DNA of 64,000 bases, taken from Selaginella moellendorffii (taxonomy: Eukaryota > Plantae > Lycopodiophyta). The stretch is from the NCBI RefSeq assembly GCF_000143415.4, contig NW_003314274.1:624806-688805 (forward strand). Reading direction: 5' to 3'. Shown here one piece after another: positions 30,001 to 53,362 of the stretch (position 1 is the first letter of the stretch; each line of letters opens with the position of its first letter). A model generated the notes under the pieces. That model worked only from the letters and a program-made list of their open reading frames with translations, was not told where the DNA came from and ran no database searches. The translations under genes and the position numbers were made by a program.

Positions 30001-32822
30001 CGGACTCGATGAACAGTAGGGGAAGCCATGGGAGATGGTGATGTGGGAGAGAGGAGCTGTAATTCCTTCCAACAGATCTAAGGCTGATGTAGTTGGAACG
30101 AGCACCACAGAGGAGGACTTGCTATTGATGATGTTGAAGGCGATATCGGTGACGGTGGACCCGATGTGTACTCGAACGGGCAACGTTTCCCTAAGTCCAG
30201 AAGATGGAGACACAAAATGCCCGCCGATGCCTTCAACCCTCATATCCCGTATAGTAGGAGAAAGAGGAACGTGATGTCGGGTAGCAAAGTCCGTGTCCAT
30301 GAAGCAGGAAGTTGCACCCGAGTCCAGTAGCGCCAGAGCCTTGAGTCCTGATTGTCCGGTGAAAGAAAGGAGACATGGGACGTGGAAGTTGCGGGAATTG
30401 GTGGTGGCTTTGATGAAAGGTGGTGAGGAGCTTGATAAACAAAAAAAGTGATTTTTATTCGGGAAGTCCAAATAGACAGCTCCTACTCTGTTTGGACAGG
30501 GTCGTTTCCCGACTGCAACAGAGGTGGACTTTGAGGCAGAGTGAACTCGAGCAGTCGGGGAGGCTTCTTAGGACATACAGCTGCTTTGTGATTAGGATCA
30601 GCACAGTAGAGGCAAAGATTATGAGATATTCGACGTTGCTTCTCAGCAGGACTCAACTTCCCTCTAATGAGTCAGGGAGTACCAGAAATATCCATCGGAA
30701 CTGGAGCAGTAGGTTCAGGAGTATGCCCCGAAGACTCAAGCTAGGATTCCTGAGTCTGGGACGGAAAAACAGCGGCGCGGCGACTTTCCTGACGATGTTC
30801 AAAGAGACGGTTGTCACATTGAACAGCTTTGTTGATGGCGTCCGACAGGTCCTTGGGATCCTCCATGGTGAGCAACAAATCCTTGACACCGTTGTTGAGG
30901 CCGAAACGAAATTGGTCAATCAGGGCCCGCTCATCCCACTGAGTGTCCAAGGCAAGGAGTTGGAACTCTACAGCATAGATCGAGGCGGGACGAGACCCCT
31001 GAGAGAGACGTCTCATCTTTGTGGTAGCAGCCCGAACCCGATCCGTCTCGCCAAAACATGCTTCGAGCTTCTCTTTGAACAATTGAAGATCCATCAGCTC
31101 CGGAACCACAACCCCTTTCATGCTCTTCTCCAGAAGAGGAGAAAACCATGACAAAGCTACACCTTCCAGCAACGTCCCAATCGCACCGATTTGAGACTCG
31201 GGAGTGGGGTACCGCCGATGCTGAAGTGCGAAAATCAGCTCCATTTGGTTCAGAAATCCGCGAAGCTCCGAACGCTTGCCTGAAAATTTCACCGGGAAAC
31301 TCACCTTCGGTTCAGGAACTTTGCTGGATCCTTGAGCCGAAAGTGAAGCAAGCTCCTGCTGCATGCGAAGAAGGGTCGCCTTCAGCTTGGTATTCTCAGA
31401 CTGGATTTTTGCAAGAACTTCGGCAAAGAAATCAGGATGGCTTGGAGACTCCATCGACAAGAAGAAAGAAAAAGGGGAAAAAAGGCAAAGGTAGTCAAAC
31501 AATCAAAACGAGCTAAAGCAAAAAAAGAAAAAACACAATCTGAATCAAACTGTCAAGACCCTCAACAAGATCAAGATTGGAAAATGCAAAAGACAAAGAG
31601 AAAAGCTAGTGGAAACAAAGAAAAGGCCTTAGACTGGTGTTGATTCAGATTGTGGAGAAATGGAACAAGGCTAACCTATATATACTATAGGTTGATGAAG
31701 CTCCACCACTCTTAGATCGAGGACGGCCTAAATATAGCTGAGGTCAAGGAGTCGCCACATCATCATCAGGAATCTGGCTCGAGACTCAAGAATCGTACAG
31801 GAAATTAGAGAGTCAGGAATAGGGAAGTGTCTCGAGAGTCAGGAATGTGGTCTACAGGTCAGAAATCCGGTGAAAGTCAGGAATGTAGCAAGAATTGGGG
31901 GATTCCTGACAGTTATATGACTAAAGTAGAATAGAAAATTTAGTTGCTTACACAATGCTCACAATGGTGTAATAATATTAAAAATATTATCAACAAAACA
32001 ATTGAGATATTACACTTTGCATAGGAAGTGTTATATATCATTCATACACTCTAGAGTAAAAAACTTTAGAATAGCCATAAGTTTGTCATAATCAACTTAC
32101 AAACTTTCACAAGAAATATAATACCCAAGATAAATTGTATCTTTAGAATAACATTAAAATATTAAATTAAGTTAAAATATTTTAATGTAAAAATTCTATG
32201 TTAATGGTAGGTGCAAAACCCCCCTTAGATGGTTGAATCACTAATGAAGTTTTAAACCCCTATGATATGTATATACTAAAAATATGGCAAATAACTATCC
32301 CAATCTAAATATTAAAAGTTTACATACTTTATCATGATCCCTTTGAAGATTCAAATGAGTATTCTATTAAACCATCTATCTATGGATAATAAACATTTGT
32401 AAAAGTATAGCATATTTTTAGCTGAGATGTTAATATCTAAAATGTCTTAACCATAAACACAAGATATTATCTGAGAGAATTCACTTTGGACAAAATTGCT
32501 AGAACACCATTTGATTGAAAAGGAAGTATCTAATGGTAGTCATAAACACATTAGCAAGAGCACCAACTTCCACTCAACAAATTCAGTAGTCAAAAGCATT
32601 CATTACCAAAAATTAATTTTGGAAATGGTCCTATCAAATCAAACACATCAATGATCTTTTTGTAGTATAAGAGGCAATATTACTAATTTAGCACTAAACA
32701 CAAGTATACACATACTGAATAATATTATATTATATCTTTGGCCAATAAAAAGATTTGCATAACTTCTTAATCACACAATGGTGTCCTATATGCTTGCTTA
32801 GTCATAGTATATATAGAGAAAG

Positions 32823-32967
32823 TGTAGCACACCTTATTTCTTTTTTCTTAAGCCAACTAAAAAAGGGGCAATTGCTTGATGAGAGAGCCCTTAGTGGTTA
32901 TTTTATTTCTATTTATTCCTTAAGATTCCAAGGATCCACAATAATACCCATGATCACATGCACTACA
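32823..32967 (-). mobile_element. Solo LTR of TRIM family T
   Basis: TGTAGCACACC...CACTACA is the reverse complement of the TRIM LTR; perfect TSD GAAAG on both sides. Confidence 0.85.
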
Positions 32968-35279
32968 GAAAGCATGGAATAAATCACAACTAGCCACAAA
33001 TAATTAATCCCTATAAAGTAAAGAAGGTTGTCCTTAAAGCAATTGTAAATGCTAAAATGGCAAATCATCAACAAAATTTTCAACCCATCATGAAACATTT
33101 AAATCCTTTACTCAATCTTTTTAGCCTCACAACATTTATTAAGTAAATGTAAATTTAGTTTTACACATTATGAACATTGAACATCAAATAGAGCAACCAC
33201 CAATAACATAGAATTCTTATTTGAAAACTCCACTAATGTTGGAATAACATACTTATCAAAAATACAAAAAGAGAGTAAAAAAAGGAGAGGAACTTGAAAA
33301 AAGATGTTAATATCAACCATAGAATATCCTTAGTAATGAACAATCTTGAAGTTATATATATAAAGATTTAAAGCCCATTAAGTAGTATTATCAAACATAT
33401 TTTTCAATAATAAAATTATTGTAGCATGATCACCTTCTAGTATGTTCAAGAATCATGCAAGTATATATAAAGCTTCTTAAAACCCTAAACTAATATTAGA
33501 CACTTTTTTTATCGTGGAGTAATTCACCTTTGCTAGTTACAATGTACAATTGATAATTCCAAAGGGATGATATTTATTAAGCATACTCATGGTCTCTTGC
33601 ATCAACATACCCAATATTATAAGCATCTATAAACAAGTTGAAAGGTCAAGTATAATTAGGATATGTCAATTGTCAACAATGCTTTAAGATCCGCAAATAC
33701 ACACTTACAGTTCTCAAACAAGATGAAAGATGATGTTGATGACTTATTATAACATGTTGTGTACATTTGTGTCATGTTGCAAAATATATATCCATGTGCG
33801 TGGGATGAGGTAAACCTAGTCATGTGTATGGGTGTTCTTGAGTTTGAGCTCTAATCATTATAAGTTTCATCTTTGGTATGGATTGATTGCAACGCAATTA
33901 TGTTAAGTCTGATTTCTTCGCTTTGTCTCATACTTCTTCATATCTCTTCCATTTCTCTCACTTCTATTTTAATTCATCCCTTTATTTTTACTGTTTCTTC
34001 TTTGTCTCTATATTATTTTTTATTATATTTCCTTTTTATTTTCATAAAACTTAAAATTTACTAAATGAAATAGAAGTCAAAGTTTTAGCTAAAGTGTCTA
34101 CAAAACTTCAAATAATAACATATATAAGGTAAAAGTTTCTTCAATTAATTTTAGAGTGATATAACAATCCAGCTTAGTAAATGCTTTAGAATTATTCTTT
34201 TTATTTATATGTATATAGTTCATAAAAATCAGGTTATTTTTTATAAATAGTTATTGTATATTAAATTTTTCATATGTAGAGTATGATATTAATCTTACCA
34301 AGGCTTTTAAATATTTTTATAATTAAAATGCATTAATGATTGTACTAAAATATTTTTCAAACATAAAAAATAATATTGTGAGATCTAGGTGATGTTGTGA
34401 TGTTGTATACAATTATTAATGTAGTGGGATTTTGGTAGCCATCAGATTGGTTTCAATCACTCTTATATAGGAGTTAAGGTTTTTAGGCTAATCAAATATG
34501 TATATTTTTATATTGCATTTTCATATTCTATGCATTCATATTGGTGGAGTTGAGGGGCAATTTTGATTTATTTTAAGGAGTATTTAGATTTTTTTTTTGT
34601 TTAAATTTAGCTTTTACATTATCTAGATCTCTCTCATTCATGAGGTTTATTAATTTCTTCTCTTTTCCTTTGATTTTGTTTATTTATCTTAATGGCAAAG
34701 TAATAGCCTCCTTTATAAGCTTTTAAATTTGAATTTTCTGGGAAGTCACCTAATTTAGTATTATTCAAAACTAAGAACACTTAACTTCAACTATCCCAAG
34801 ACCCTTAACCAATTAGAAAAGAGGGTGCACTCTTGTTCATAAACCTTTTCTTTATAAATCATCTCTCTTATTATTCCCTTTGTTTGATTATAATTTATTA
34901 TGCTTTTTTGCAAGTTCACACCCTTGTGAATGGAAATTAAGAGTTGCAACCCTGCTAAAAACCTCACTCTTTTGACACCCTACCCCTTCGGTTGATCTCA
35001 GTGGAGCATACTAAACTTGCAAAATATCAATCAACATGTGGTGTGATTCCTCTAAGCTAATCAATAAAGTCAAACCTAAGACCTTTTTAATACAAATGTA
35101 AGCTCATGAATTTAGACTTCCCAAAAGATACTCAACCTAGTACTATTCTAACCTAAGGATGTTTAACCCCTTTAATGATTGGATAAGGGAATATACTTTT
35201 GTTCATAGGCCCTTTCCTTCTATATTTGAACCCTTATAGATTGTTTCATGAGTTATTCCCTTTAGTTACTTATATTTTC

Positions 35280-36200
35280 TTCTTTTGACTTTGGAATAAT
35301 AATTGGTGTAATTACTTGATGCTATGTAATTGCAATTGAAAAACCAGATTCAGTTGATGGCGACATTCATAAAATGTGGTGCAACTCCTTTTGCTCTTTG
35401 TGTCAATCCTCACATCAAATTAGATTCTTTTTATAAGAATTTTGGGGATGATGTGTACTATTTATTCATCACTTTATAGTTTATCATTTTTGGGATGATG
35501 CCCAGGGTTTGTGTAAGTTTTTAACATTTCTCCAAAGGACAATATTGCAATGGTACAATGGTTTGAATATAGCCACTCATGTGGATTGAAGCCTTCTCCA
35601 AAATGTCCTTAAACACTTATTTGGACATACTAATGATTGCAACAATGCCTTCTAACAATTGTATTATGTCTAGCAAAGATCATTTGAGTTAATGATGCAA
35701 TTTGATATTTGTTTTCAAAGCTTTTTATTTTGTGCAGAGCCAAATATATTAAAGCAGATCAAGTTGGGAATATTATGGCTAGTGCTTCATCAAGATCTTA
35801 TGGGACTCAAGCATACACTACTCTAACATTAATACCTATTAATATATCACTATAAGACATCACTTTTCCCACTTATCATTGCACACACTTCAACTCATTA
35901 TCGCCCATATTTAAGGATAAGGGTGAAAATATAGATATGGTTGTAATATTCATTCCCAAGCTTGTGATAAAGTTGGCGTTCTCAACATTTTTTAGATTAG
36001 CATTCTCCATTTCGTAGGTAGAAGCCTTGTTGTCAACTTCGTCATGTTAGTCCTACTACAATGAAAGGATTTGATGTAAAGATTGTTTTAGGAAATGAGA
36101 AGTTGTATGAGTAGTGTTGCATGAATAAAATAGTGACCCTTTCATATTTTTTTTGGAAGTATTATCAAAAGGTTCATTGGGCACTAATTCATATAGTGTT
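35280..36200 (-). pseudogene. Possible highly decayed hAT-type transposase relic
   Basis: Frameshifted minus-strand remnants resemble LDESTS (about 35780) and HQLNLV (about 35345-35362), motifs of hAT transposases; boundaries approximate. Confidence 0.3.
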
Positions 36201-36649
36201 TACTTTCTAAGTTTATTTTTATAATAAAAGGTCTTATGTTATTTTTTTTATGTTGGTTGATACAAGATCAAGTTTATCTACTTTTTCTCAGCTTATGCCA
36301 CACATTATTATCTACAATTATATTATATGGCAAAGTCAATTTTCATTTGTTATGGCAATCGCCGTACACATTCATATACATAGGATAAGGTGGATATAGT
36401 TGTATCTATAGGCAATCTTGAGCTTGAGTTTTAATTATTGTGGGTGGTGCTAAGTCAAACTTTTGACCTTATCCTTGATATGGATTAATTGTAATGTAAT
36501 TATGCCAAATGTAACTTTAAAGTTTCTCCCCTTTGTTTTATACTTTTTTATCCTTCTTCCATTCCTTTTATTTTTGTTCTATTTCATTTCTCAACTTTTA
36601 CTTGTGCTTCCATCACTTTTGTCTTTATATTACTTCCTACTATATTTTT

Positions 36650-37390
36650 GTTTTGCTACTTTATTCCCTCTTCAGATCCCTTTGACAACCTTTATACTGC
36701 AATAGTTGATCAACTTAAGGAGTATATTGATTTATTTGACTTTGACCTATCGTTTTTTACTATGTGCCATTCTATTCCAATTGGAGATAGTCATCTAATC
36801 AATGTTTTTGTTCAATGTCGATCACCCAAGAATATCAAGATTTCAATTATAAATGTTATGGAGATGTTTGAGAAGGGTGTTATCCAAAACTTGTGGAGTT
36901 CTTAGGTGAATAAACCTCATTTTATGACAAAATTTGATAAGAGTATTTATTTTTATATTGACTATCATTTATTAAGTGAGGTAACTATCCCAGATATGTA
37001 TTCTCTTTGTCATATTGTTGATCTTTTGGATTGTTTAGAAAGAAGTCATTGGTTTATTAAGTTAGATCTTGCTTCTGGGTACAAGCGAGTGCTAATGGCT
37101 AAATAAGATGTTCCCAAGATTGTTTTTTATACACCATTTGGAGTTTTTGGTGATGTCATTTAGTTTAAATAATGTTCTAATGACTCTCCAGTAGATGATG
37201 GATGAGGCTTTTTATGATATATTGGAAGTGACTTCTAACTTTGTTCATAATGTCTTAACCCACTTAGAAGGGACATGGGAAGAGCATGTCCATGATATTG
37301 ACAAAGTTTTGGATCGGCTACAGGAAGTGAGTTTAAAGGTAAAGCAATCAAAATATGTGTTTAAGTCTAGATTTTACAAAATCTAATATA
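36650..37390 (+). pseudogene. Decayed Gypsy reverse-transcriptase relic
   Basis: FYIDYHLLSEVTIPDMYSLCHIVDLLDCLERSHWFIKLDLASGYKRV and WEEHVHDIDKVLDRLQEVSLKVKQSK are degenerate RT blocks. Confidence 0.75.
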
Positions 37391-39255
37391 ATGGTGTGGT
37401 GGTGTGAATAAATTACCATTAAATTTACTAATTTAATGGTGGGTGTGAAAGCCCTCTAACTCTTAAATGGTATTTAGGTTTTAGATTTTAGAATTTCAAC
37501 ACTATGCTATAATTATAATTTTTATAGCCTAAACTGCTAAATAGCATGTTTAACCAATAACTATCCATGCCTTTTCTTCTTTCTGTTTATTTTATGAATT
37601 TATTTCTAAAGAAATGCCTAATGCATGCTAAATATCTCTAAAAAAAATTAAATGTTGGTATTTATGCTTTATCAAAGCTTAATGAAATTGAAATTTTTAA
37701 AGATTCTCTGATAGCAACTTGTTATCAAGGAATTTTGAAAAATATGTAACTGCATCAAATTCAAATCAAAATTATATCTACAATTTTTTTTTCAAATGGC
37801 ATATTTCTGTATATCATTAGCAATTACCAATTATTTATAATACATTTTACCCTTTCAACTTCTCTTTTATCCCTTTATGTTAGCTTGTTAAGTTGCAGGT
37901 GGGAGTTGAGGCGCCAAGCCCCCTATATGCACATTAAACAAGCAATTCACTGTAGTATCAAATATATATATTTGCATACTGCAGACCTCTAGAGTTTCTG
38001 TTTCATGGCTTGTCCATGCTTGGCTTACTCCAGTAATTTTAATTGATGTAAAGTAAGCTTGTTCATTGTTGTATCATGATAAGTCCAACTTTATGCTCCT
38101 AGCCGTCTTGTTCTTAGATTCAAAATAGCAAATAAATTACAATGTAATTATGAGGTATAAATTCAGATGTGTTAGTAAAACCTTCTCAGTTTGTCTACCG
38201 CCTACACAAACAGAGCTATCTTTGATTCATGCGTGTTGCTACTAGTGAATACTGCAAGCAACAAACAGTTCGCAAAGTGTTGATGTAGACTATCTGCAAG
38301 CTTCAAGACAGATCTGCGTCAGCAATTTTAAACAAGCAGTGCAGCAGAGTTGATTTCTGAACCACCATCTGGGCCAGATGGCTGTTAACGTGTCCTGTCC
38401 GTGCAATCAGGAGCGTCCACTTCGAAGGAGGGCGGCATTCACATGTTTTCATATGATCACTTTCTTTGTCAATTTCTACGTTGAGATTGCACCATCAAAG
38501 CATAGTCACCTAAACATCCATTTCTTTCGACCTTTCCATGTCACTCTTGTGTACACGAGCTCGTTCGTACTCAGTATTTTTATGTTTTATATTTTGAAAA
38601 GCCACCGTTGTTCTGATTGTCGCGTCACGAGTGCCAGTTTGAAGGACGCAACATCAACACCTTGGTGGCACAAGTGACTCGTGGCAATATGACAAAAAGT
38701 ACACATTAGCTGCCACCGCCCTAGCTCAGCCTGCAGAAAACAAAGAAGTACTCAAGGGAAGGGTTACAGGTTTTCCAAATTTTGTTTTGTTGTGAGCTTG
38801 TTTCCTAGCGATAAGGTGCATAAACAGTAAAAGGAATGTCCGTACAATCGGCTAATCAAGTGAACTCGAATTAATTTCTATGTAAACTCTCTTATTTAAA
38901 AAGACCTTCTGGACCACCGCGTAAACTCGAAGACAAGACTGTGAAAATCACTACCAGTGGTACGAAAGGCTCTTGCTGAAAATGCGTACGTGCTCAAACC
39001 AGCTGGCTTTGTGAGCATACCCAAGATCATATTCGCTCAGAAGTACCTGAATGATATGTCCAGGAAATTGGAGTTATAGATGAGCTGTCATATTTTTGCT
39101 CAGATATTAAAATGTTTTTAGCATTATCGATGATCATAATCAGCATGTATGCTTATAAGGTTGCCTTTGTTTGCTCTTATATGCAGGGTAACGAGTAGTT
39201 ATAGCTATTGCATGCAAAAGTGTCTAGAATCTAGTGTGTATTTGCTGTAGTAGCT

Positions 39256-41120
39256 ATGGCTTCTGTTCTTCGACAGATGACTATGGGCGAAGCTAGCTTC
39301 CTTTCGCTGCTGACAGACTTCATCGGCAAGACGGAGAAGCTTCAAAACAATCCTCCAAATCTGATACCACAGGAATCGCTTGTTGTGACTAAGGTGCTTG
39401 AAGTGCTGGGACCTTATAGCATCGACAATGGTGGACCTTTGCTCCTCAAACCAATCTATTTTCAAGGCCTTCAAAATAGGAAGAACCTCATTGTCACATA
39501 TCCTGGTGAAGAGCAAGATAGAATAGTCTCCATTGTTGGCTGTCATATGGACGTGGTAGTGGCTGATCCGACCAAATGGGTAACTACTGCTCTTGCCTCT
39601 TGCAAATTGAGCTGATTACTATCTGATAGCTGTTTTGTTTTCTTCAGGAACATTCGCCGTTTAAGTTAACCCAGCTTGAAGATGGTGATACGCTCTATGG
39701 ACGAGGCACTACAGATTGCCTCGGACATGTTGCATTAGTGACGCAGCTGTTGAAGCAGATGGCAGAAGCAAAGTTGAGGCTCAAAACAACTGTGGCAGCT
39801 GTGTTCATTGCAAACGAAGAGAATGCCACAGTCCTGGGCATTGGGGCTGATGCACTGATGGATGCACATGAACTCGATTTCCTCAAAAATGGTCCTTTGT
39901 AAGTTCGAGGCTCTAGCCAATTGATTGAGCTTGCATACATGGTATTTTCGTTTTGTTTCTGCAGATATTGGATGGATTCCTCCGACAAACAGCCTTGCAT
40001 TGGAACCGGTGGAATGCTTGCTTGGCATCTCACAGCTCATGGAAAACTTTCCCACAGTGGTCTACCAAAGCAGGTACATTTGTACAGTACAGGAAAGTAA
40101 TCCTCACCGTATCTAAAGCTCTTGGCAATGTGTTGCAGGGAATCAATGCAATTGAGCTTGCTTCTGAGGGACTGAAAGAAATTCAGGATCGTTTCTATAA
40201 CGATTTTCCAAAGGTTGTTCCAGATGAAGATAACTACAAGTTCGACACCCCCTCAACAATGAAGCCTACACAATGGACATGTAAGCATTGACAGCAAGCA
40301 GATTGTGGACTCTTAAGCTTGTTAAATTCTTCTTTGCAAGAAGACCCCGGGAGTGCAATTAATCAAATCCCAGACACTTGCACCATTTCTGGAGATTGCA
40401 GGTATTTGATTGAATTTTGGATTTCGAATTAAAATATGTTGCTCCTCGCATTGTGAATTATGTTGCAGGATAACGCCTTTCTACAAGTACTCTATCTTGA
40501 GATCTAGAACCCTTTGCTGAAACGTGTGCGCAGGGTGGACGAAGTTGAAAAGAAACTCGTGCAGTACGTGGACTATATAAACCAAAACATAGAAAAACTG
40601 GAGACTCGTGGACCGGCGTCTAAATATGTGTTACCGGATGGCACCAGAGGAAAGTAAGGAGCATAGAAATGTTGCTAAAGCCTCCCTTGAGTTTCCATTT
40701 TCCAGATTGGAGATAACATTTGATGCGGAAAAGATGCAAGGCATTGCCTGTCACATGGACTCAAAGGGATATAAAGCCTTAGCTAAAGCCACTGAGGAGG
40801 TTCTGGGACATGTTGAGCCGTTCTCAATTACTGGATCACTTCCAATCGTTGGTGATCTGCAGGTACCTTTCATTTGTTCTATTTCTATCCTACTGAGAGC
40901 AAGTTCAATTATCACCAGGACCAAGGATATGACGTGCAAACCATAGGCTATGGTAAAATGACATTATCTCTTTATTGAAGTGCTAATATTTATTTAAGTG
41001 AATGATGCAGGTTTAACATCAGCATATCATGCAGACAACGAGATTTGCCTGCTGTCGGACATGTCCCAAGGCTTCAAAATCTTTGCCATATTGATAGCAG
41101 ACTTGGATAATTCATTATAA
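39256..41120 (+). CDS. NAOD: Acetylornithine deacetylase (M20 peptidase family), multi-exon
   Basis: GCHMDVVVA, LYGRGTTDCLGHVAL, FIANEEN, WMDSSDKQPCIGTGG, GKLSHSGLP, TPSTMKPTQW, SITGSLP and YHADNE; stop TAA at 41118-41120. Confidence 0.92.
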
Positions 41121-41632
41121 GAAAGATGATGCAGTTCAAATACGTTCTAATCAATGCACTTCAACTTGACCGACGCTTGAGTGATCAGGAGGCCGGTCAA
41201 AGACTGCAAGCCAAGTGATTGGCCCCTTTGAGTCAGTTGTATTTGCTGTTATATTGTTCGTACTTGATATTATATATTGAATGTGAAAAGTATTTTATTA
41301 TAATTTTGAAATAATTTTCTAGATGAAAACACTAAAGCGGAGAAGTATTTGGATGGGATGGCCTAGCGGCACGTGAAGCTCACACCCGTGGTGCTTTGGC
41401 TCGTTCCAAGCACTAGCGATTTAAATTGAAGCATTCGGGAGAAATGTCTCCTCGCGTCCCTGTTTGTCAGGGATTTAGGTGAGGAAAAGATTGAAATGGG
41501 ACTCTAAGAGCCAAGTAATGAAAGTCAATAAAACTGACAGTCTTCAAAAGCTCCATGCTCAATAATCCTGATCCAAATTGCATTCTTACATCCATGATTC
41601 ATAAAAGCACAAATATTTCTCTTGAAATGAAA

Positions 41633-42619
41633 CTACGCCAACCTTTGTCTCTTATTGGTACCGGAATCGGATAGACATTTGAAGAACCTCTTCCAGCCAA
41701 CGTAAACTCCCTCGATGATAAGTGCCGTGAGATGCCGAGGCACCTCCAGCTTACACTTTGCGCTTTCCATCGTGACAATCGGTCGGCCATCTCCATCCAA
41801 CTCGATTCCCTGCTGGGATTGCGCCTTGTGGAAACACTCGTAGTAGTAAATCGGACTGATATATGGTGGAAGACCGTAATCAACGTCGCGATCCACGAAC
41901 AAAACATTTGGGAAGGGCATCACGCTCCTGAGTAGAACAGCCAGAAGAATCCTCCCACACCTCCCATTACCATCGAGAAAAGGATGTATGTTCTCAAACT
42001 CGAGGAAAAATGATCCCCCGAGCTTGAGCACAGCTTCGATCTGCGCCTTGGCCGGTTCCAAGCGAGAAATCTCTGAAAGGGCCGACTTGGTTTTGGTGAA
42101 GAGCTCGTCCAGGGAAGCACGCACCAAAGTTGGCCAGGTAAAGACATGCACGCCAACTTCCGTATTTGTGAACACGACTTCCTTCTCTAAGCCCCGAATC
42201 CGGCCCGCGATCTCTGCATTTGTTGAAGCGAGCAATTCGGCGTGGCACTTCTCCAGTTCTTGGATGGAAAACTCGGGCTGTGACTGCCCATCATCGACCC
42301 AATAGTGTTTTAAGGCCTTGTAAAGGCAGCGAACGCTTTCCAGCCTCGAATCCTCCTGCTTTTCACGCAATTCTAGAGCACCCTTTTCGATCGCTTGCAC
42401 GGTTTCATCGTAAGTGTCAAAGCCTTCCTTTTCAATCTTGTTAACTTGGAAGAGAAACTCTCCGAGAGCAACTCGTGTGTGTTCCGTCCTAGCAGAAGTC
42501 TTCTCCTCTGGGGAGAGTTTCTCATACCTGGAACAAAAATCCACAATCCTGTCGAGCATCTCGCTGGTGCTCAAATCGCTCCTCCTCCACTTTGGTCTCT
42601 CCTTGACGACGAAATCCAT
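41633..42619 (-). CDS. Fic/Fido-domain protein (putative AMP-transferase), intronless, about 328 aa
   Basis: Complete Fic motif FENIHPFLDGNGRCGRILL (HPFxDGNGRxxR); N-terminal QVNKIEKEG resembles the autoinhibitory helix; basic C-terminus NKRQRLA. Confidence 0.88.
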   Translation of the reverse strand: MDFVVKERPKWRRSDLSTSEMLDRIVDFCSRYEKLSPEEKTSARTEHTRVALGEFLFQVNKIEKEGFDTYDETVQAIEKGALELREKQEDSRLESVRCLYKALKHYWVDDGQSQPEFSIQELEKCHAELLASTNAEIAGRIRGLEKEVVFTNTEVGVHVFTWPTLVRASLDELFTKTKSALSEISRLEPAKAQIEAVLKLGGSFFLEFENIHPFLDGNGRCGRILLAVLLRSVMPFPNVLFVDRDVDYGLPPYISPIYYYECFHKAQSQQGIELDGDGRPIVTMESAKCKLEVPRHLTALIIEGVYVGWKRFFKCLSDSGTNKRQRLA

Positions 42620-42714
42620 CACTGGATACAAAAAACCCTATACTCGACTGCAACAAAACCATTTTTCTAAAAACCTTTTTAGCAGAAAGGGGAGAAAAAA
42701 AAAAACGATGATCG

Positions 42715-43086
42715 TCAGTTCACGCGCTGTACCGCAGAATCGATTTGTTTAACGTGCTCTTGGAGAACATTCCACTGATCCATGGTGAGAGAGATTCCTG
42801 GAATAATCAACAAAGCAACCATTGATCAGTGTACGGGTGTGGAGTTGAAAACCAACCTTTCTTCCCTGGCAAGCACTCGCCTCCTTTGTACCAATACTCT
42901 CGAATGTCTACCAAGACTTGCCCCCTCCATTTGCGCACCGAGACCTTGCGATTCTTTGATATCTACGAGCTCCAAGAGATTAGGGCTACCCCGGATTCGA
43001 TTATCCCATCATACCTCGCACACCGCCACGCTCTCCTCGTCCTCTTTCTCGTCTGCTTTGCTCCCGCGCTTCCTCTTGCTCGCCAT
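42715..43086 (-). CDS. KIWI: PC4/Sub1-family transcriptional coactivator (KIWI-like), 3 exons; absent from the ORF track
   Basis: MASKRKRGSKADEKEDEESVAVCE|ISKNRKVSVRKWRGQVLVDIREYWYKGGECLPGKK G|ISLTMDQWNVLQEHVKQIDSAVQRVN*; GT-AG introns; PC4 signature VDIREY...PGKKGISL. Confidence 0.92.
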
Positions 43087-43169
43087 TACCAAAAAACAAA
43101 AGATTCTTTAGGGCTCTTCCAGATTCGATTATTAATCTTTGTTGATCAAAAGATTGAGAAAAGAAGAGG

Positions 43170-44854
43170 TTAGGGGCATTTTTGCCAGTATCCAGCAACT
43201 TGGCTGGCCGTAAACCTTGACACCATGACTTGATCCCTGGGAGGCATGTTGCAAGGTTGTCCTGCTGTGACATTTCCAAAGTTTTCACCTGGATTCGGCC
43301 GCCATGGCTGGACGCCTTTGGGAACCTCCGGCTTGAACCTTTGCAACTTTGCGTACGCTTGCATGACATGCAGCATGTACGAGTAGACGTGATCCATGGT
43401 TAGCTGCTCCTTGAGAAAGGCTTGCCCGCGTTTTCCAATAGCAGAAGCCTTTGAAGATTTGGAAGAAAAGTTTAGGCAAGGAAAACCAAATGGAAGAATG
43501 AGATTTACCTCAAATGGATGTGCGTTTCCCCAGTCCACAGCATGCTTAATGGATGAACACATGTTTTCTCTGCTGATTGGCCAGTACTCCACATAAGGTA
43601 GCCAGGATCTAGCGAAAAACTCCCAGAAATCGGGCTGAATGTGGAGAATTGTGGAGCCACAAGATATCAAGTATTTGAGGCTAGCTGACCACCCTCGTCC
43701 TTCAGCATAAACCTTGTATCTACGCCACAAATATCAAGAAAAAACACACACAAAGTTTACAATCTTTATCCATCACTTCTCATTTTAAGTCCATTTCATT
43801 ACCGGGTGTGACATTGCTTTGATAGCGACGATGTCTTGAATCCCTCGGCTTCCTCTTTTGCCCAATCCTGGGAATTAAAAAAAAATGTAAGAACTTCATC
43901 ACCATTTGCGTGGATTCTTACCAAATAATAGACGACAACGTTGTATTGCGTGTTGTTGCATTGAAGCAACTCCTCGCGAACCGGTGTCATCACCCAAAGA
44001 TTTCCCTTCCAGTAGGCAATCGCCTCCCTCTCAAACCAATCCGTTTCATTCGCTCCATCGAAAATCTCCACACTTTCTTGCTCCCAGGGACGAATCTTGA
44101 CTTGTGGCCTATGAAAGAAAATTCACAAAGTTTTGGCGATCAAACTCTCGAAAAAACAGCGAAAAGAAGAAGCTCAGGGACGATGGTGCTCGCTTACCAT
44201 CCCCAGAAAGACCAATCTGGGAAGAGTATATCAAAATGCCCCCCGAATCTGGACGTGCAATAGGAGAAGACTGGCGGCGGCGGCTTTGACCGATACTCGT
44301 CCTTGGGAACTTGAGGGAAATCATTGCAAACAAACACCATCTCCATGTCCGGAATCATCCCGGGGAATTTCTCCAGCAGCAAGAGCAATCCTTGGAGAGT
44401 GATCTCGTCCCGGGTCTGGATGCATTCCTGGATCCGCTCAAAGTAGAGCTTACCATCGACGATAACCAGCCGAAAATCGCCTTTTCGCCGGGCCTCGTCC
44501 AGGTGCTCGCGAGTGATCCCACTCTCGCTCCAGGGAGCCAGATCTTCGTGGATCCATGCGAAGTAAGATGGGCAATTGGGCTCCTGCTGCTGGCGATGGA
44601 TCGTCCCCATGTGGTCCTCCTCATGCTCGACTACCGCGAGAGGATCAACTCGTTGGTCCTCCTGGATCACCGGGAAGCATCACCGTGAGTGTAAGATCGA
44701 GACTAAACTTACACTTGCCGATCGATCGACCGATTGGAGCTAGATGGATAATTTACTGTTTGCTTACTCTGAAAAAGAAGAACAGGGAAACGAGGAGTAG
44801 AAACGCCATGGCTGCTCCCAGCACCCTGTTGCGGAAGAGATCTCCATAAAACAT
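43170..44854 (-). CDS. GT90/CAP10-family glycosyltransferase (protein O-glucosyltransferase-like, DUF821)
   Basis: N-terminal TM anchor; CPSYFAWIHEDLAPW, DILFPDWSFWGW, AYWKGN, YKVYAEGRGWSASLKYLISC and MDHVYSYMLHVMQAYAKL. Confidence 0.92.
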
Positions 44855-45066
44855 GGAATCGAGTGAGAGATGGATGGATCGAAGATAGATCGATGGATCG
44901 CTCGATCGAGCTGGACTCCACTCCACTCTCTCTACCAGACCAGAAAGAGAAAAGAAGAATCTTTCCACCGGTATAACGACACGTACTCGAAACCGGTGAC
45001 TTTTTACATTGACTCGTTCAACGGTAGGCTAATGGACGGTCCAATAAACGTGGACCATGGATTCCC

Positions 45067-47187
45067 ATGAATGCCCAAGAATCTTCGCATATGCCAAGAG
45101 CCTGTGGTATATTCCATATGCAAGCTTGTTTTGATGCGAACTTTTGCGCGTCACTGATCAAATCATGCAAGACTCTGGGCGATGTCGAGTCCGCCCACGC
45201 TCGGCTTCTCTCCAATCCACATCTTCTTCCCTCTTCCGGAGTGTTCCTCCTCAATCTCCTCGTCCAAATGTATGCCAAGTGTGGCAGCCTTGCCAAGGCC
45301 GAGGAGGTCTTCGCCTCGATCCCTCACAAGAACACTTACTCGTGGGTTCTCATGCTCTGCGCGTATGCCGACCATGGACGCTTCCATGAGGCCAACGATA
45401 TCTTTGAGAAGATGCCCGAGTGGAACGTTGTGGCCTTCACCGCTATCCTTGACGCAAATACCAAGTCTGGGCATTTGGAGGGTGCTAGAAAGATACTCAA
45501 TGAGATGCCGGAGAGAAATCTCGTGTCATGGACAGCAATGCTGTCGGCTTACGTACAAGCAGGCCAGTTTGAGCAGGCAAAAATTGTATTCCTTGCAATG
45601 CCAGAGTGGGATCTTATGTCAAGAAACGCAATGCTGTCGGCATATGCCAGAAATGGGCATTTGGAAGAGGCCAAGCGACTGTTTGATTCCATGCAGCAGC
45701 GCGACATGGTGACGTGGGCGGCAATGCTGTCGGCCTACACGGAGACAGGGCATCTGGCGGCGGCAAAATATACGTTTGATTCTATGCCGGAGCATAATCT
45801 AGTCTCAAAGACATCGATGGTCGGAGCATATTCCCAGAACGGGCAAATGGAGCTCGCCAAGCAAGTGTTTGATTCAACCCCAGAGCTCGACGTCTTCTCT
45901 TGGAACGCAATGCTCTCGGCCTTTGCAAACAATGGCTACCTCCGGGAGGCTAAAGAATTCCTGGACGAGATTCCGGAATGGAATGTGGTTTCCTGGAACG
46001 CTTTGCTTTCGGCATTTGCTCAAAGGGGTCGCTTAGATCACGCAAGGGATCTCTTCGACTGGATGCCGGAGCGCGATCGCATCTCCTGGTCTTTGATGCT
46101 GGCGGCACTCCTGCAAAGAGGGCTCCTCCGCGAAGCCAGAGCTCTTCTCGATCGGATGCCCGAGTGGAGCGCCATGGTCTGGACGGCGATGCTCACCGCC
46201 TTCTCGGAGCACGGGCATCTAGATCAAGCCAGGAAGATCTTCGACGAGATTCCAGAGAATAATCTCGTATGTTGTACGGCAATGTTGGCGGCGTACGCCG
46301 AGAACTCGCTGCTGGAACACGCCAAGGAGATATTCGATGGCATGGCGGAGAGGAATCTAATCTCCTGGAACGCCATGGTCACGGCATATTCCCAGAACGG
46401 CCACCCTCGCGAGGCCAAGCGGCTCTTCGACTCCATGCCCGCTTGGGACCTCGTCTCGTGGACCGCCCTGTTGACCGCCTACACGCACGGCTTCCACGTG
46501 GACGAGGCCAAGTCCACGTTTGACCGGATGCCGTACAGGGACGTGGTGGCGTGGAACGCGCTGTTGACCGCATACGTGCAGGGCGGCCACGTACGGCAGG
46601 CGCGGAGCCTGTTTGACGCGATGCTCCAGCGCTCGCAAGTGTCGTGGAATCTTATAGTGCACGGATATGCCCAGGCCGGGCATATGCTGGGAGCCCGGGC
46701 TCTCTTTGACGGTATGCCCGAGAGGGAGATCCCGGCGTGGACGGCCACGATTGCGGGATATGCTCAGTCCGGGCATCCCACGGAAGCGCTGGAGCTCTTC
46801 TGCGAGCTACACTTGGAAGGGATCAAAGCGGCAGAGGCGTCGTTCACGTCGGCTTTGATCTCTTGCAGCCATGGCGGGGATTTGCGCTCGGCCTGCCGAT
46901 GGTTTGCGTCGATGAGCTTGGACTTTGGATTGACACCCATGAAGCAGCAGTTCAGCTGCATGGCGGATTTGCTGGGCCGAGCCGGGCATGCCCGAGATGC
47001 CCAAGAGCTCATGGAGACGATGCCTTTCCAGCCCGACTTCCAGGCCTGGCTGTCGCTGCTCGGGGCCTCGTTCCGGGGCCCGGGCGATGCCGAGTGCGGA
47101 GCTCGGGCAGCCGAGGCAGCGGTGGAGCTCAACCCTCACGTCGCTGCTCCATACGTACTCGTCACGAATGCGATGCGCTATTGTTAA
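45067..47187 (+). CDS. PLS-class PPR protein dominated by tandem 31-aa S/SS motifs, with an E domain and no DYW
   Basis: Repeats of the form FD.MPE.N.VSW.AML.AY...G.L.EA; C-terminal FSCMADLLGRAG...MPFQPDFQAWLSLLGA; intronless. Confidence 0.93.
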   Translation: MNAQESSHMPRACGIFHMQACFDANFCASLIKSCKTLGDVESAHARLLSNPHLLPSSGVFLLNLLVQMYAKCGSLAKAEEVFASIPHKNTYSWVLMLCAYADHGRFHEANDIFEKMPEWNVVAFTAILDANTKSGHLEGARKILNEMPERNLVSWTAMLSAYVQAGQFEQAKIVFLAMPEWDLMSRNAMLSAYARNGHLEEAKRLFDSMQQRDMVTWAAMLSAYTETGHLAAAKYTFDSMPEHNLVSKTSMVGAYSQNGQMELAKQVFDSTPELDVFSWNAMLSAFANNGYLREAKEFLDEIPEWNVVSWNALLSAFAQRGRLDHARDLFDWMPERDRISWSLMLAALLQRGLLREARALLDRMPEWSAMVWTAMLTAFSEHGHLDQARKIFDEIPENNLVCCTAMLAAYAENSLLEHAKEIFDGMAERNLISWNAMVTAYSQNGHPREAKRLFDSMPAWDLVSWTALLTAYTHGFHVDEAKSTFDRMPYRDVVAWNALLTAYVQGGHVRQARSLFDAMLQRSQVSWNLIVHGYAQAGHMLGARALFDGMPEREIPAWTATIAGYAQSGHPTEALELFCELHLEGIKAAEASFTSALISCSHGGDLRSACRWFASMSLDFGLTPMKQQFSCMADLLGRAGHARDAQELMETMPFQPDFQAWLSLLGASFRGPGDAECGARAAEAAVELNPHVAAPYVLVTNAMRYC

Positions 47188-50577: not shown

Positions 50578-53019
<2,442 letters not shown>

Positions 53020-53362
53020 CGCGCTCTCTGTCGAAATGCTGCGAGACCTAAGCGCATGCCTTTTTAACTCCTCTGGTGCTAGCTGAAAGCTCTAGAAAGA
53101 ACTAGGGCAGATGCAAGCAAGCGAATGGGAGCACGACACGTGTAAAACGCCCCAATGAGAATAAACCAGGTCATCCAGCCAATCAGAAGGCGTGGCCACT
53201 CTACAATGAAGTGGCTCGGCCAATCAGAGCCCGGCATTTTGTTGGTTGTTTTATTGCCGCCAGATCGCGTGGGCGTGGACAAATCGAGGCCGTTTGTTTT
53301 AAATGCCAGGTGAAAAGAAACTTAAAAGAGTGCCCTAGCTTGGACGCTGGACGGAGCTCGCC
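53020..53362. promoter_or_regulatory. Bidirectional promoter shared by BiP and GRP94
   Basis: 343 nt between divergent ATGs; G-box GACACGTG (about 53135), three CCAAT boxes (about 53152, 53179, 53220) and GCGTGG/TGAAGTGG motifs resembling unfolded-protein-response (UPR) elements. Confidence 0.75.

What the first reader, a model, noticed from the sequence alone, without database searches (positions are those of the whole stretch)
41633..42619. Intronless Fic-domain AMP-transferase candidate in a land-plant gene block
Seen: a clean 328-aa ORF with the full catalytic motif HPFLDGNGRCGR. About 150 aa upstream is LFQVNKIEKEG, which resembles the (S/T)xxxE(G/N) autoinhibitory helix (compare FICD IYHTVAIEGN). 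I see no signal peptide, TM segment or TPR, and the tail KRQR is NLS-like. Known: Fic enzymes AMPylate proteins, are mainly bacterial, and occur as FICD/HYPE in animals; they are not a standard angiosperm family. Inference: an uncharacterised plant AMPylation switch, possibly horizontally acquired since it is intronless among intron-rich neighbours.
Basis: partly seen in the sequence, partly recalled or inferred. Interest (0 to 1): 0.85.

Follow-up and report, generated by a model that had tools for sequence, protein, structure and literature searches.

The report
Unannotated Fic enzyme gene in spikemoss
A real, transcribed but unannotated gene for a Fic-type protein-modifying enzyme sits in the spikemoss Selaginella moellendorffii; it belongs to an old, overlooked Fic family of lycophytes and ferns, not to a recent bacterial import.

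Summary
Window 41633-42619 (minus strand) is an uninterrupted 328-aa ORF. It matches Pfam Fic, carries HPFLDGNGRCGR, and has an inhibitory-helix-like NKIEKEG 149 residues upstream. AlphaFold gives pLDDT 91, and the best structural matches are FICD and other class II Fic proteins (Z about 25).

The window is Selaginella moellendorffii scaffold GL377578.1, where this ORF has no gene model.

"Intronless" is true only of the coding sequence. RNA contigs splice a 53-nt intron that ends 2 nt before the ATG and join the ORF to the last exon of the upstream PC4/KIWI gene.

Recent horizontal transfer is not supported:
- The gene is one of about ten S. moellendorffii paralogues. In four that I read, the GenBank models wrongly cut out the catalytic loop.
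- It groups with fern genes (support 99/95) inside a single plant clade (100/95).
- The sister clade holds only eukaryote-labelled or eukaryote-context sequences.
- Synonymous sites are saturated while proteins stay conserved.

Most likely it is an autoinhibited AMP-transferase, possibly also a de-AMPylase, with unknown targets. Activity, translation and transcription start are untested.

It is a new member of a known kind. The scan has already noted this Fic family, and what looks like the same PC4-Fic locus, on other pieces of this genome.

The parts
41633..42619 (-). Fic coding sequence: 328 codons plus stop, single exon, ATG at 42619-42617. It has no gene model in GCA_000143415.2.
41951..41986 (-). 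Catalytic loop HPFLDGNGRCGR (residues 212-223). H212 is the predicted catalytic base.
   Evidence: invariant columns H212 P213 F214 N218 G219 R220 in 77 sequences
42422..42448 (-). Inhibitory-helix motif QVNKIEKEG (residues 58-66). E63 (42431-42433) aligns with FICD E234. The flanking S/T and G/N positions are V59 and K64.
42143..42172 (-). Predicted beta-hairpin flap (residues 150-159), the target-docking element of Fic folds.
   Evidence: strands 150-153 and 156-159
41681..41713 (-). Family-specific C-terminal motif EGVYVGWKRFF (residues 303-313), at the start of a long C-terminal helix.
42581..42601 (-). Family-specific N-terminal motif ERPKWRR (residues 7-13), shared with the non-plant eukaryotic relatives.
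42622..42674 (-). 53-nt GT..AG intron whose acceptor lies 2 nt before the Fic ATG. It is spliced in RNA runs X2 and X6 and retained in an X5 contig.
42675..42797 (-). Last coding exon of the PC4/KIWI gene (stop codon 42715-42717) plus 40 nt of 3'UTR. It is joined by splicing to the Fic exon.
42715..43086 (-). Upstream PC4/KIWI coactivator gene: 86 aa, three coding exons, introns at 42798-42856 and 42963-43014. It is annotated in GenBank.
41500..41632 (-). Approximate Fic 3'UTR. RNA depth falls away between about 41575 and 41380. The convergent M20 peptidase gene ends with a poly(A) tail at 41300.
   Evidence: tables 2 and 7

Best explanation
The ORF is a genuine, transcribed and selectively constrained nuclear gene of Selaginella moellendorffii, missed by the genome annotation.

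What it encodes: a soluble, single-domain class II Fic enzyme. Inferred from family knowledge, H212 deprotonates a Ser/Thr/Tyr hydroxyl of a target held on the beta-hairpin flap. D216, N218, R220 and R223 position ATP and Mg so that AMP is transferred. E63, on the N-terminal inhibitory helix, reaches R223 and keeps the resting enzyme off, or as in FICD switches it to de-AMPylation. Targets are unknown.

Origin: the gene belongs to an old multigene Fic family of lycophytes and ferns, distinct from animal FICD. Its nearest classifiable relatives are single-exon Fic genes of other eukaryotes.

Expression: its RNA overlaps the upstream PC4 gene. Every contig that reaches the ATG runs on into PC4's last exon, so either the Fic promoter lies inside PC4 or Fic rides on PC4 read-through RNA.
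For: Domain and fold:
- Pfam Fic, E 2.5e-10.
- AlphaFold2 mean pLDDT 91.1, pTM 0.91.
- Foldseek's top hits are FICD, C. elegans Fic-1 and BT_2513.
- VIA-align gives Z 24.8 to FICD over model residues 10-324. Class I and III Fic proteins reach only Z 12-13 and align only from about residue 86, so the N-terminal inhibitory-helix region matches class II structures alone.
- E63 aligns with the inhibitory Glu of FICD and of bacterial class II proteins.

Host gene, not a contaminant:
- The neighbouring PPR protein matches scaffold GL377578.1 exactly. The flanking genes are M20 peptidase, PC4, GT90, PPR, P450, TBP, HSP70 and HSP90.
- RNA contigs from three studies cover the ORF and splice it to the PC4 exon. 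The DNA run shows no such joints.

Constraint:
- Against homologues, pS is 0.6-0.9 (saturated) and pN is 0.2-0.45.
- Within-species differences are 3 synonymous and 4 non-synonymous, pN/pS about 0.38.
- All catalytic residues are invariant in ten plant sequences.

Phylogeny (careful IQ-TREE):
- The 12 plant rows form one clade (100/95).
- The window gene groups with Adiantum and two Logan transcripts (99/95).
- The sister clade (95/93) holds all six rows that are eukaryotic by label or by genomic context.
- The labelled bacteria and FICD served as the outgroup on which the tree was rooted, so their position outside is by construction.

Annotation: four other S. moellendorffii paralogues are uninterrupted ORFs with intact motifs, despite gene models that delete the loop.
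Against: - No protein-level evidence exists, and no ribosome-profiling or 5'-end data were available.
- RNA depth over the ORF is low: 3-21, against 14-154 for PC4.
- The inhibitory motif departs from (S/T)xxxE(G/N) on both flanks.
- The chemistry (AMP or another nucleotide, transfer or removal) cannot be read from sequence.
- Seven polymorphisms are too few to prove present-day constraint.
- Most rows of the sister clade are unlabelled.
- The runs behind the two closest homologues were not identified to species.
Confidence: 0.72

Rival explanations
1. Recent horizontal transfer from a bacterium into Selaginella, with the intronless coding sequence as its trace.
For: The coding sequence has no intron, while neighbouring genes have five to eight tiny ones. 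Fic proteins are mainly bacterial. I found no named seed-plant, moss or algal homologue.
Against: The genome holds about ten divergent paralogues. Fern genes group with the window gene, and the plant sequences form one clade at 100/95. Synonymous sites are saturated. GC3 is 0.59, close to the neighbouring PPR gene at 0.69. The RNA is spliced to a host exon. Labelled bacterial hits are far weaker (E about 1e-6) than the eukaryotic group (1e-31 to 1e-20 in the profile search).
Confidence: 0.04
2. The ORF is not a working gene. It is a decaying relic that is transcribed only because it lies in the long 3'UTR or read-through of the PC4 gene.
For: There is no gene model. In run X6, RNA depth drops about ten-fold inside the ORF, and the abundant PC4 contig runs 239 nt into it. 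Four of the seven polymorphisms change the protein. Upstream AUGs precede the Fic AUG on any RNA that starts in PC4.
Against: The frame is open over 328 codons, and every family-invariant residue is present. Its terminal branch (0.35) is no longer than those of its fern relatives. The fold prediction is very confident. In X2 and X5 the ORF is covered along its length at depths comparable to PC4 in X5. The Fic AUG has a purine at -3 and G at +4.
Confidence: 0.1
3. It is an active Fic enzyme with a chemistry other than AMPylation: mainly de-AMPylation, UMP, GMP or CMP transfer, or phosphocholine transfer.
For: From established knowledge: FICD with its inhibitory Glu is chiefly a de-AMPylase. AvrAC, with the same canonical motif, transfers UMP. 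A mycobacterial Fic protein was solved with CDP and is among the structural matches (7cb8).
Against: The motif is the canonical HPFx(D/E)GNGRxxR associated with AMP transfer. It is not the AnkX or Doc variant (and the motif definition in PMC2686095).
Confidence: 0.2
4. PC4 and Fic are expressed as one unit: either a dicistronic read-through mRNA with an intergenic intron, or a PC4-Fic fusion made by skipping PC4's last exon.
For: Spliced RNA contigs join PC4's last exon to the Fic exon, leaving 42 nt between the PC4 stop and the Fic ATG. The exon junction is 40 nt after the PC4 stop, which by my own knowledge is short of the usual distance that triggers nonsense-mediated decay. Skipping exon 3 would be in frame, giving 388 aa with no stop. 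Read-through RNAs with intergenic splicing are described in Arabidopsis (PMC9768141).
Against: De Bruijn contigs do not show single molecules. No joint from exon 2 to the Fic exon is among those listed, although three joints were not shown. Three further AUGs lie between the PC4 AUG and the Fic AUG. Other paralogues stand alone, and the closest homologues are on transcript contigs that begin only 41-74 nt before the ATG and are too short to show a second ORF. An earlier follow-up of what looks like the same locus on another piece reported two separate proteins (s1-346859).
Confidence: 0.15
5. The ORF comes from contaminating DNA or an assembly mis-join.
For: None beyond the unusual family.
Against: The stretch occurs in 20 runs from 11 studies. 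RNA contigs bridge it to the PC4 exons by splicing. It lies inside a 2.86-Mb scaffold between plant genes.
Confidence: 0.01

Closest known systems
FICD/HYPE (human) and FIC-1 (C. elegans), the animal ER Fic AMPylase/de-AMPylase
   Same: Class II Fic fold with the inhibitory Glu on a helix N-terminal to the core. Canonical HPFxDGNGRxxR loop and a beta-hairpin flap. They are the best structural matches: Z 24.8, rmsd 3.5 over 252 residues.
   Different: Sequence identity is only about 17%. There is no transmembrane anchor and no TPR domain. The one FICD-type row (Patiria) was placed in the outgroup, and the plant proteins group with other eukaryotic Fic genes instead. The plant protein has its own N-terminal ExPxWR and C-terminal EGxYxGW motifs. 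The inhibitory motif flanks are V and K in place of S/T and G/N.
BT_2513 of Bacteroides thetaiotaomicron (PDB 3cuc) and other stand-alone bacterial class II Fic proteins (Dde_2494 4rgl, CdFic 4x2c, SoFic 3eqx)
   Same: Similar size and the same fold over nearly the whole chain. 3cuc gives Z 24.6, rmsd 2.7 over 248 residues.
   Different: About 15% identity. SoFic-type proteins add a winged-helix domain that is absent here. The labelled bacterial proteins that entered the tree served as its outgroup and are far weaker search hits than the eukaryotic group.
Selaginella moellendorffii paralogues (NCBI 'adenosine monophosphate-protein transferase fic-1', SELMODRAFT_407185, _444864, _422537, _411522 and others) and Adiantum nelumboides L7F22_068990
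   Same: Same family, with the same N- and C-terminal motifs and single-exon coding sequences. Adiantum L7F22_068990 is 57% identical and groups with the window gene.
   Different: The window gene is only 31-48% identical to the other Selaginella copies. It has no gene model at all. It alone is known to share a spliced exon with a PC4 gene. SELMODRAFT_407185 has a signal-peptide-like N-terminus that the window protein lacks.
Uncharacterised single-exon Fic genes of other eukaryotes (for example Dendronephthya gigantea LOC114525795, an EukProt entry, and tandem arrays on long eukaryote-like contigs)
   Same: They share the ExPxWR start and the inhibitory-helix Glu, most carry the catalytic loop, and many (not all) carry the EGxWxGW end. 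They form the sister clade of the plant family.
   Different: Identity is 20-27%. Many carry a C-terminal extension of about 80 aa that is absent in plants. Most have no organism label.

Membership tests
Fic/Fido superfamily (Pfam PF02661) | Profile match above the curated cut-off | tested here: met
   41.5 bits against a cut-off of 24, E 2.5e-10
Fic/Fido superfamily (Pfam PF02661) | Active-site motif HPFx(D/E)GN(G/K)R, extended to HxFx(D/E)GNGRxxR for AMP transfer | tested here: met
   HPFLDGNGRCGR at residues 212-223. Motif definition from PMC2686095.
Fic/Fido superfamily (Pfam PF02661) | Helical Fic fold with a beta-hairpin flap | tested here: met
   Model pLDDT 91.1. Z 20-25 to solved Fic structures. 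Strands at 150-153 and 156-159.
Class II Fic proteins (inhibitory helix in cis, N-terminal to the core) | An inhibitory helix on the same chain, upstream of the Fic core | tested here: met
   E63 aligns with FICD's inhibitory Glu and with the bacterial NAIEN motif. Residues 10-85 of the model align only with class II structures.
Class II Fic proteins (inhibitory helix in cis, N-terminal to the core) | Consensus (S/T)xxxE(G/N) | tested here: inconclusive
   The sequence is V59-N-K-I-E63-K64. The Glu is kept, but both flanking consensus positions differ. E63 is nearly invariant in the plant family. I could not measure a contact between E63 and R223, because model coordinates are not exposed.
FICD/HYPE orthologues | N-terminal membrane anchor and TPR repeats | tested here: not met
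   No TPR family hit. The N-terminus is charged, and the only hydrophobic 19-mer is a core helix.
FICD/HYPE orthologues | Branches with FICD sequences | tested here: not met
   With the single FICD-type row (Patiria) among the rows chosen as outgroup, the plant clade groups with the non-FICD eukaryotic Fic genes at 92/77. With midpoint rooting the same split appears at 84.
Class I Fic toxin-antitoxin modules (VbhT/VbhA type) | Inhibitory Glu supplied by a separate small antitoxin | tested here: not met
   The inhibitory helix is part of the same chain. Class I structures align only from about residue 86, at Z 12-13.
Protein AMP-transferases (by function) | Transfer of AMP from ATP to a target hydroxyl, dependent on the motif His | not testable with these tools
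   This needs recombinant protein assays.

The most novel reading that the evidence does not exclude
The Fic enzyme is produced from the PC4 transcription unit, by read-through with an intergenic intron that places the Fic ATG 42 nt after the PC4 stop, or by in-frame skipping of PC4's last exon. Under this reading, a chromatin and transcription coactivator and a cytosolic or nuclear AMPylase are co-expressed. It would be a plant protein-AMPylation system unrelated to FICD, retained in seed-free vascular plants and apparently lost in seed plants.
Probability: 0.12. Interest if true: 0.7.

Novelty: new member of a known kind. Interest (0 to 1): 0.45.

Why it matters
A 2025 review of AMPylation states that FIC proteins are absent from plants and fungi (PMC12409994). 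That statement is too broad. A lycophyte and a fern carry an intact, conserved Fic family, and the copy studied here is transcribed. The family has been half hidden by gene models that delete the catalytic loop, and at this locus by a missing model altogether. Corrected models would give plant biologists a tractable entry to AMPylation outside animals and bacteria.

The family also shows that eukaryotes hold at least one Fic lineage besides FICD. A 2015 in-silico survey did mention plant Fic proteins in passing (supplement of PMC4454073), and some copies are already in public databases. The advance is therefore incremental.

Tried and rejected
- Identifying the two closest homologues: a paper search for their run accessions found nothing, so calling them ferns rests only on the tree.
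- Naming the sister clade: 30 cluster look-ups gave only two labels outside Selaginella and Adiantum. I classified four more rows by genomic context instead.
- dN/dS: synonymous sites are saturated, so only a rough statement that it is well below 1 is possible.
- The 30 loose letters on X6 contig 21 at 42383: neither the whole 30-mer nor any of four 15-letter pieces of it occurs exactly in the window. They remain unexplained.
- Literature on Fic in lycophytes or ferns: none found in the held library.
- E65-G66 as the inhibitory pair: rejected after alignment with FICD and bacterial class II proteins put E63 in that column.
- TM helix at residues 224-242: rejected, because this is the buried helix after the catalytic loop.

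Full report
**Observation.** The ORF listing finds a minus-strand ORF at 41633..42631.
- It matches Pfam Fic (PF02661, E 2.5e-10, 41.5 bits against a cut-off of 24).
- By sequence it also matches solved Fic proteins.
- The catalytic loop HPFLDGNGRCGR is residues 212-223, and QVNKIEKEG is residues 58-66.
- No TPR family is hit.
- The N-terminus is charged. The only hydrophobic 19-mer is the helix that follows the catalytic loop.
- The KRQR tail is present but not conserved in homologues.

**Whose genome.** The neighbouring 706-aa PPR protein is found, residue for residue, on scaffold GL377578.1 (2.86 Mb) of Selaginella moellendorffii GCA_000143415.2. The genes called there are M20 peptidase, PC4 (86 aa), GT90, PPR, P450, TBP, HSP70 and HSP90. 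Nothing is called over the Fic ORF. No search returned a protein identical or nearly identical to it; the best hit is 57% identical. The gene is therefore unannotated.

**Expression and gene structure.** The stretch occurs in 20 runs from 11 studies. I laid contigs of one DNA run and three putative RNA runs on 40000-45900.
- The three RNA runs show GT..AG joints of 47-106 nt in all neighbouring genes. The DNA run shows none, so they are RNA.
- The Fic ORF is covered in X2 (one 912-nt contig, 41742-42621, depth 21), in X5 (depth 3-9) and partly in X6.
- In X2 and X6 the ORF's exon is spliced at 42621|42675. A further joint at 42797|42857 appears in X5 and X6.
- The upstream exons encode the C-terminus of the annotated PC4/KIWI protein. 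All three PC4-region introns are GT..AG.
- The PC4 stop is at 42715-42717. The third intron (42622-42674) lies in PC4's 3'UTR and ends 2 nt before the Fic ATG.
- The PC4 stop and the Fic ATG are 42 nt apart when this intron is spliced, and 95 nt apart when it is retained, as in X5 contig 16.

"Intronless" therefore holds for the coding sequence only. The RNA is processed by the host spliceosome and overlaps the PC4 transcription unit. Contigs cannot show whether single molecules carry both ORFs. The start of the Fic RNA is unknown, but it must lie at or upstream of 42675. Skipping PC4's last exon would be in frame with Fic, but no such joint is listed. The Fic AUG has G at -3 and G at +4. Three other AUGs lie between the PC4 AUG and the Fic AUG.

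**Fold and class.** AlphaFold2 on a 77-sequence alignment gives mean pLDDT 91.1 and pTM 0.91, with a hairpin at residues 150-159 and a long C-terminal helix.
- Foldseek's best matches are FICD, C. elegans Fic-1 and BT_2513.
- VIA-align gives Z 24.8 to FICD (model residues 10-324), 24.6 to BT_2513 and about 20 to SoFic.
- Class I and III proteins (VbhT, NmFic) reach only Z 12-13 and align only from about residue 86. The N-terminal 85 residues are thus the class II addition.
- In alignment A4, the FICD-type TAIEGN and the bacterial NAIENS fall on the window's NKIEKE. A profile-to-PDB alignment puts the family's conserved Glu on the Glu of FICD's TVAIEGN (that profile includes one FICD-like row).
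- The inhibitory Glu is therefore E63, nearly invariant in the plant family. The consensus S/T and G/N positions are V59 and K64.

**Family in plants.** The closest proteins are two Logan transcript ORFs (56% and 54% identical), Adiantum nelumboides L7F22_068990 (57%), and then many S. moellendorffii proteins at 31-44%.
- The two Logan ORFs lie on contigs of 1.1-1.4 kb, with 41-74 nt before the ATG.
- Several Selaginella models lacked the catalytic loop. For four of them I read the DNA. Each is an uninterrupted ORF of 313-363 codons with HPFxDGNGRxGR, so the GenBank models had cut out an in-frame false intron.
- Pairwise identities separate about ten paralogue lineages from allelic or tandem near-copies.
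- A search with a plant-only profile again named only S. moellendorffii and A. nelumboides.

**Relatives outside plants.** An exhaustive profile search gave 12 hits below 1e-30, 11 of them from Selaginella, Adiantum or Logan transcripts and the weakest (P0054) non-plant. A long series at 1e-31 to 1e-20 shares the N-terminal ExPxWR and, in many cases, the C-terminal EGxWxGW. Few carry labels.
- One is the octocoral Dendronephthya gigantea, and one comes from EukProt.
- Four that I looked up lie as single-exon ORFs, two of them in tandem arrays, on long contigs. Those contigs have sparse short ORF calls and exon-sized fragments of SH2, biotin carboxylase or coproporphyrinogen oxidase, which is a eukaryotic context.
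- The ESM Atlas feature search points, as a lead only, to eukaryotic Fido clusters commonest in Mollusca and Ascomycota.

**Tree.** I built a careful IQ-TREE of 55 rows, leaving out long-branch and motif-less rows. A quick 85-row version agrees.
- The 12 plant rows form one clade (100/95, and in 100% of bootstrap trees).
- The window gene groups with Adiantum L7F22_068990 and the two Logan transcripts (99/95). The other Selaginella paralogues fall outside that group.
- The 32-row sister clade (95/93) contains all six eukaryote rows.
- The labelled bacteria and the FICD-type row were the outgroup used to root this tree. In the midpoint-rooted quick tree they also fall on the far side of the deepest split (support 84).

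The lineage of the window gene therefore appears to predate the lycophyte-fern split, unless a plant-to-plant transfer occurred.

**Constraint.** Against homologues, pS is 0.6-0.9 (saturated) and pN is 0.2-0.45. Seven differences between runs and the window inside the ORF are 3 synonymous and 4 non-synonymous, giving pN/pS about 0.38. That is weak evidence on its own. GC3 is 0.59, against 0.69 for the neighbouring PPR gene.

**Interpretation.**
- Shown here: a real, spliced-context, transcribed, conserved class II Fic gene of an old lycophyte-fern family, unannotated at this locus.
- Inferred from family knowledge: it is an AMP-transferase held off by E63, and possibly a de-AMPylase as FICD is. 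Its targets are unknown.
- Recent bacterial transfer, contamination and FICD orthology are rejected.
- An ancient transfer into an early vascular plant, with later loss in seed plants, remains possible. So does descent from an older eukaryotic family with many losses.

**Known or new.** A 2025 review says FIC is absent from plants and fungi (PMC12409994). A 2015 survey mentions plant Fic proteins in a mixed clade, in its supplement (PMC4454073). NCBI and UniProt already name some Selaginella copies fic-1 or Fido domain-containing. I found no paper on Fic in lycophytes or ferns.

Earlier notes of this scan flagged the same family many times in this genome. They include a PC4-Fic pair on another piece, probably the other haplotype (s1-346859), and the faulty gene models (s1-432092). 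I reached the same points independently before reading those notes.

Noticed in passing
L005:6001-7092, L010:2501-3571, L011:2501-3550, L012:2501-3442: The GenBank models of four S. moellendorffii Fic paralogues (SELMODRAFT_407185, _444864, _422537, _411522) remove an in-frame false intron that holds the catalytic loop. The genomic ORFs are uninterrupted and carry HPFxDGNGRxGR.
   Followed up: yes
window 42622-43086: The PC4/KIWI gene has a 53-nt intron in its 3'UTR, 40 nt after its stop codon. The intron is spliced in two RNA runs and retained in a third. Skipping PC4's last exon would read in frame into Fic (388 aa), but no such joint was listed.
   Followed up: partly
window 43086-43170: Only 83 nt separate the GT90 stop codon from the PC4 start codon on the same strand, so the GT90 3' end and the PC4 5' end must touch or overlap.
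   Followed up: no
window 42383: RNA contig 21 of run X6 (depth 154) runs from the PC4 exons 239 nt into the Fic ORF. It then carries 30 letters that match nothing in the window. The PC4 poly(A) site was not found.
   Followed up: partly
window 41970-42166 (42015): DNA run X1 has doubled depth here, and a minor contig with a 1-nt deletion at 42015 (depth 7.9 of 51.7). This could be a sequencing error, the other haplotype or a close copy.
   Followed up: no
window about 50578-55187 (L009:13512-18121): HSP70 and HSP90 genes lie 8-12 kb from the Fic ORF. FICD's known target is an HSP70, but nothing here links them, so this is probably chance.
   Followed up: no
L007:2138-8927 and L008:5881-9029: The non-plant relatives form tandem arrays of two or three single-exon Fic genes on long eukaryote-like contigs of ENA assemblies, next to SH2, M14 peptidase and biotin carboxylase fragments. 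The organisms were not identified.
   Followed up: partly
L005:6001-6066: The paralogue SELMODRAFT_407185 starts with a hydrophobic, signal-peptide-like stretch that the window protein lacks. Family members may therefore act in different compartments.
   Followed up: no
window 32000-38000: An AT-rich block (GC 0.29-0.30) lies between gene-rich stretches of GC 0.42-0.60.
   Followed up: no
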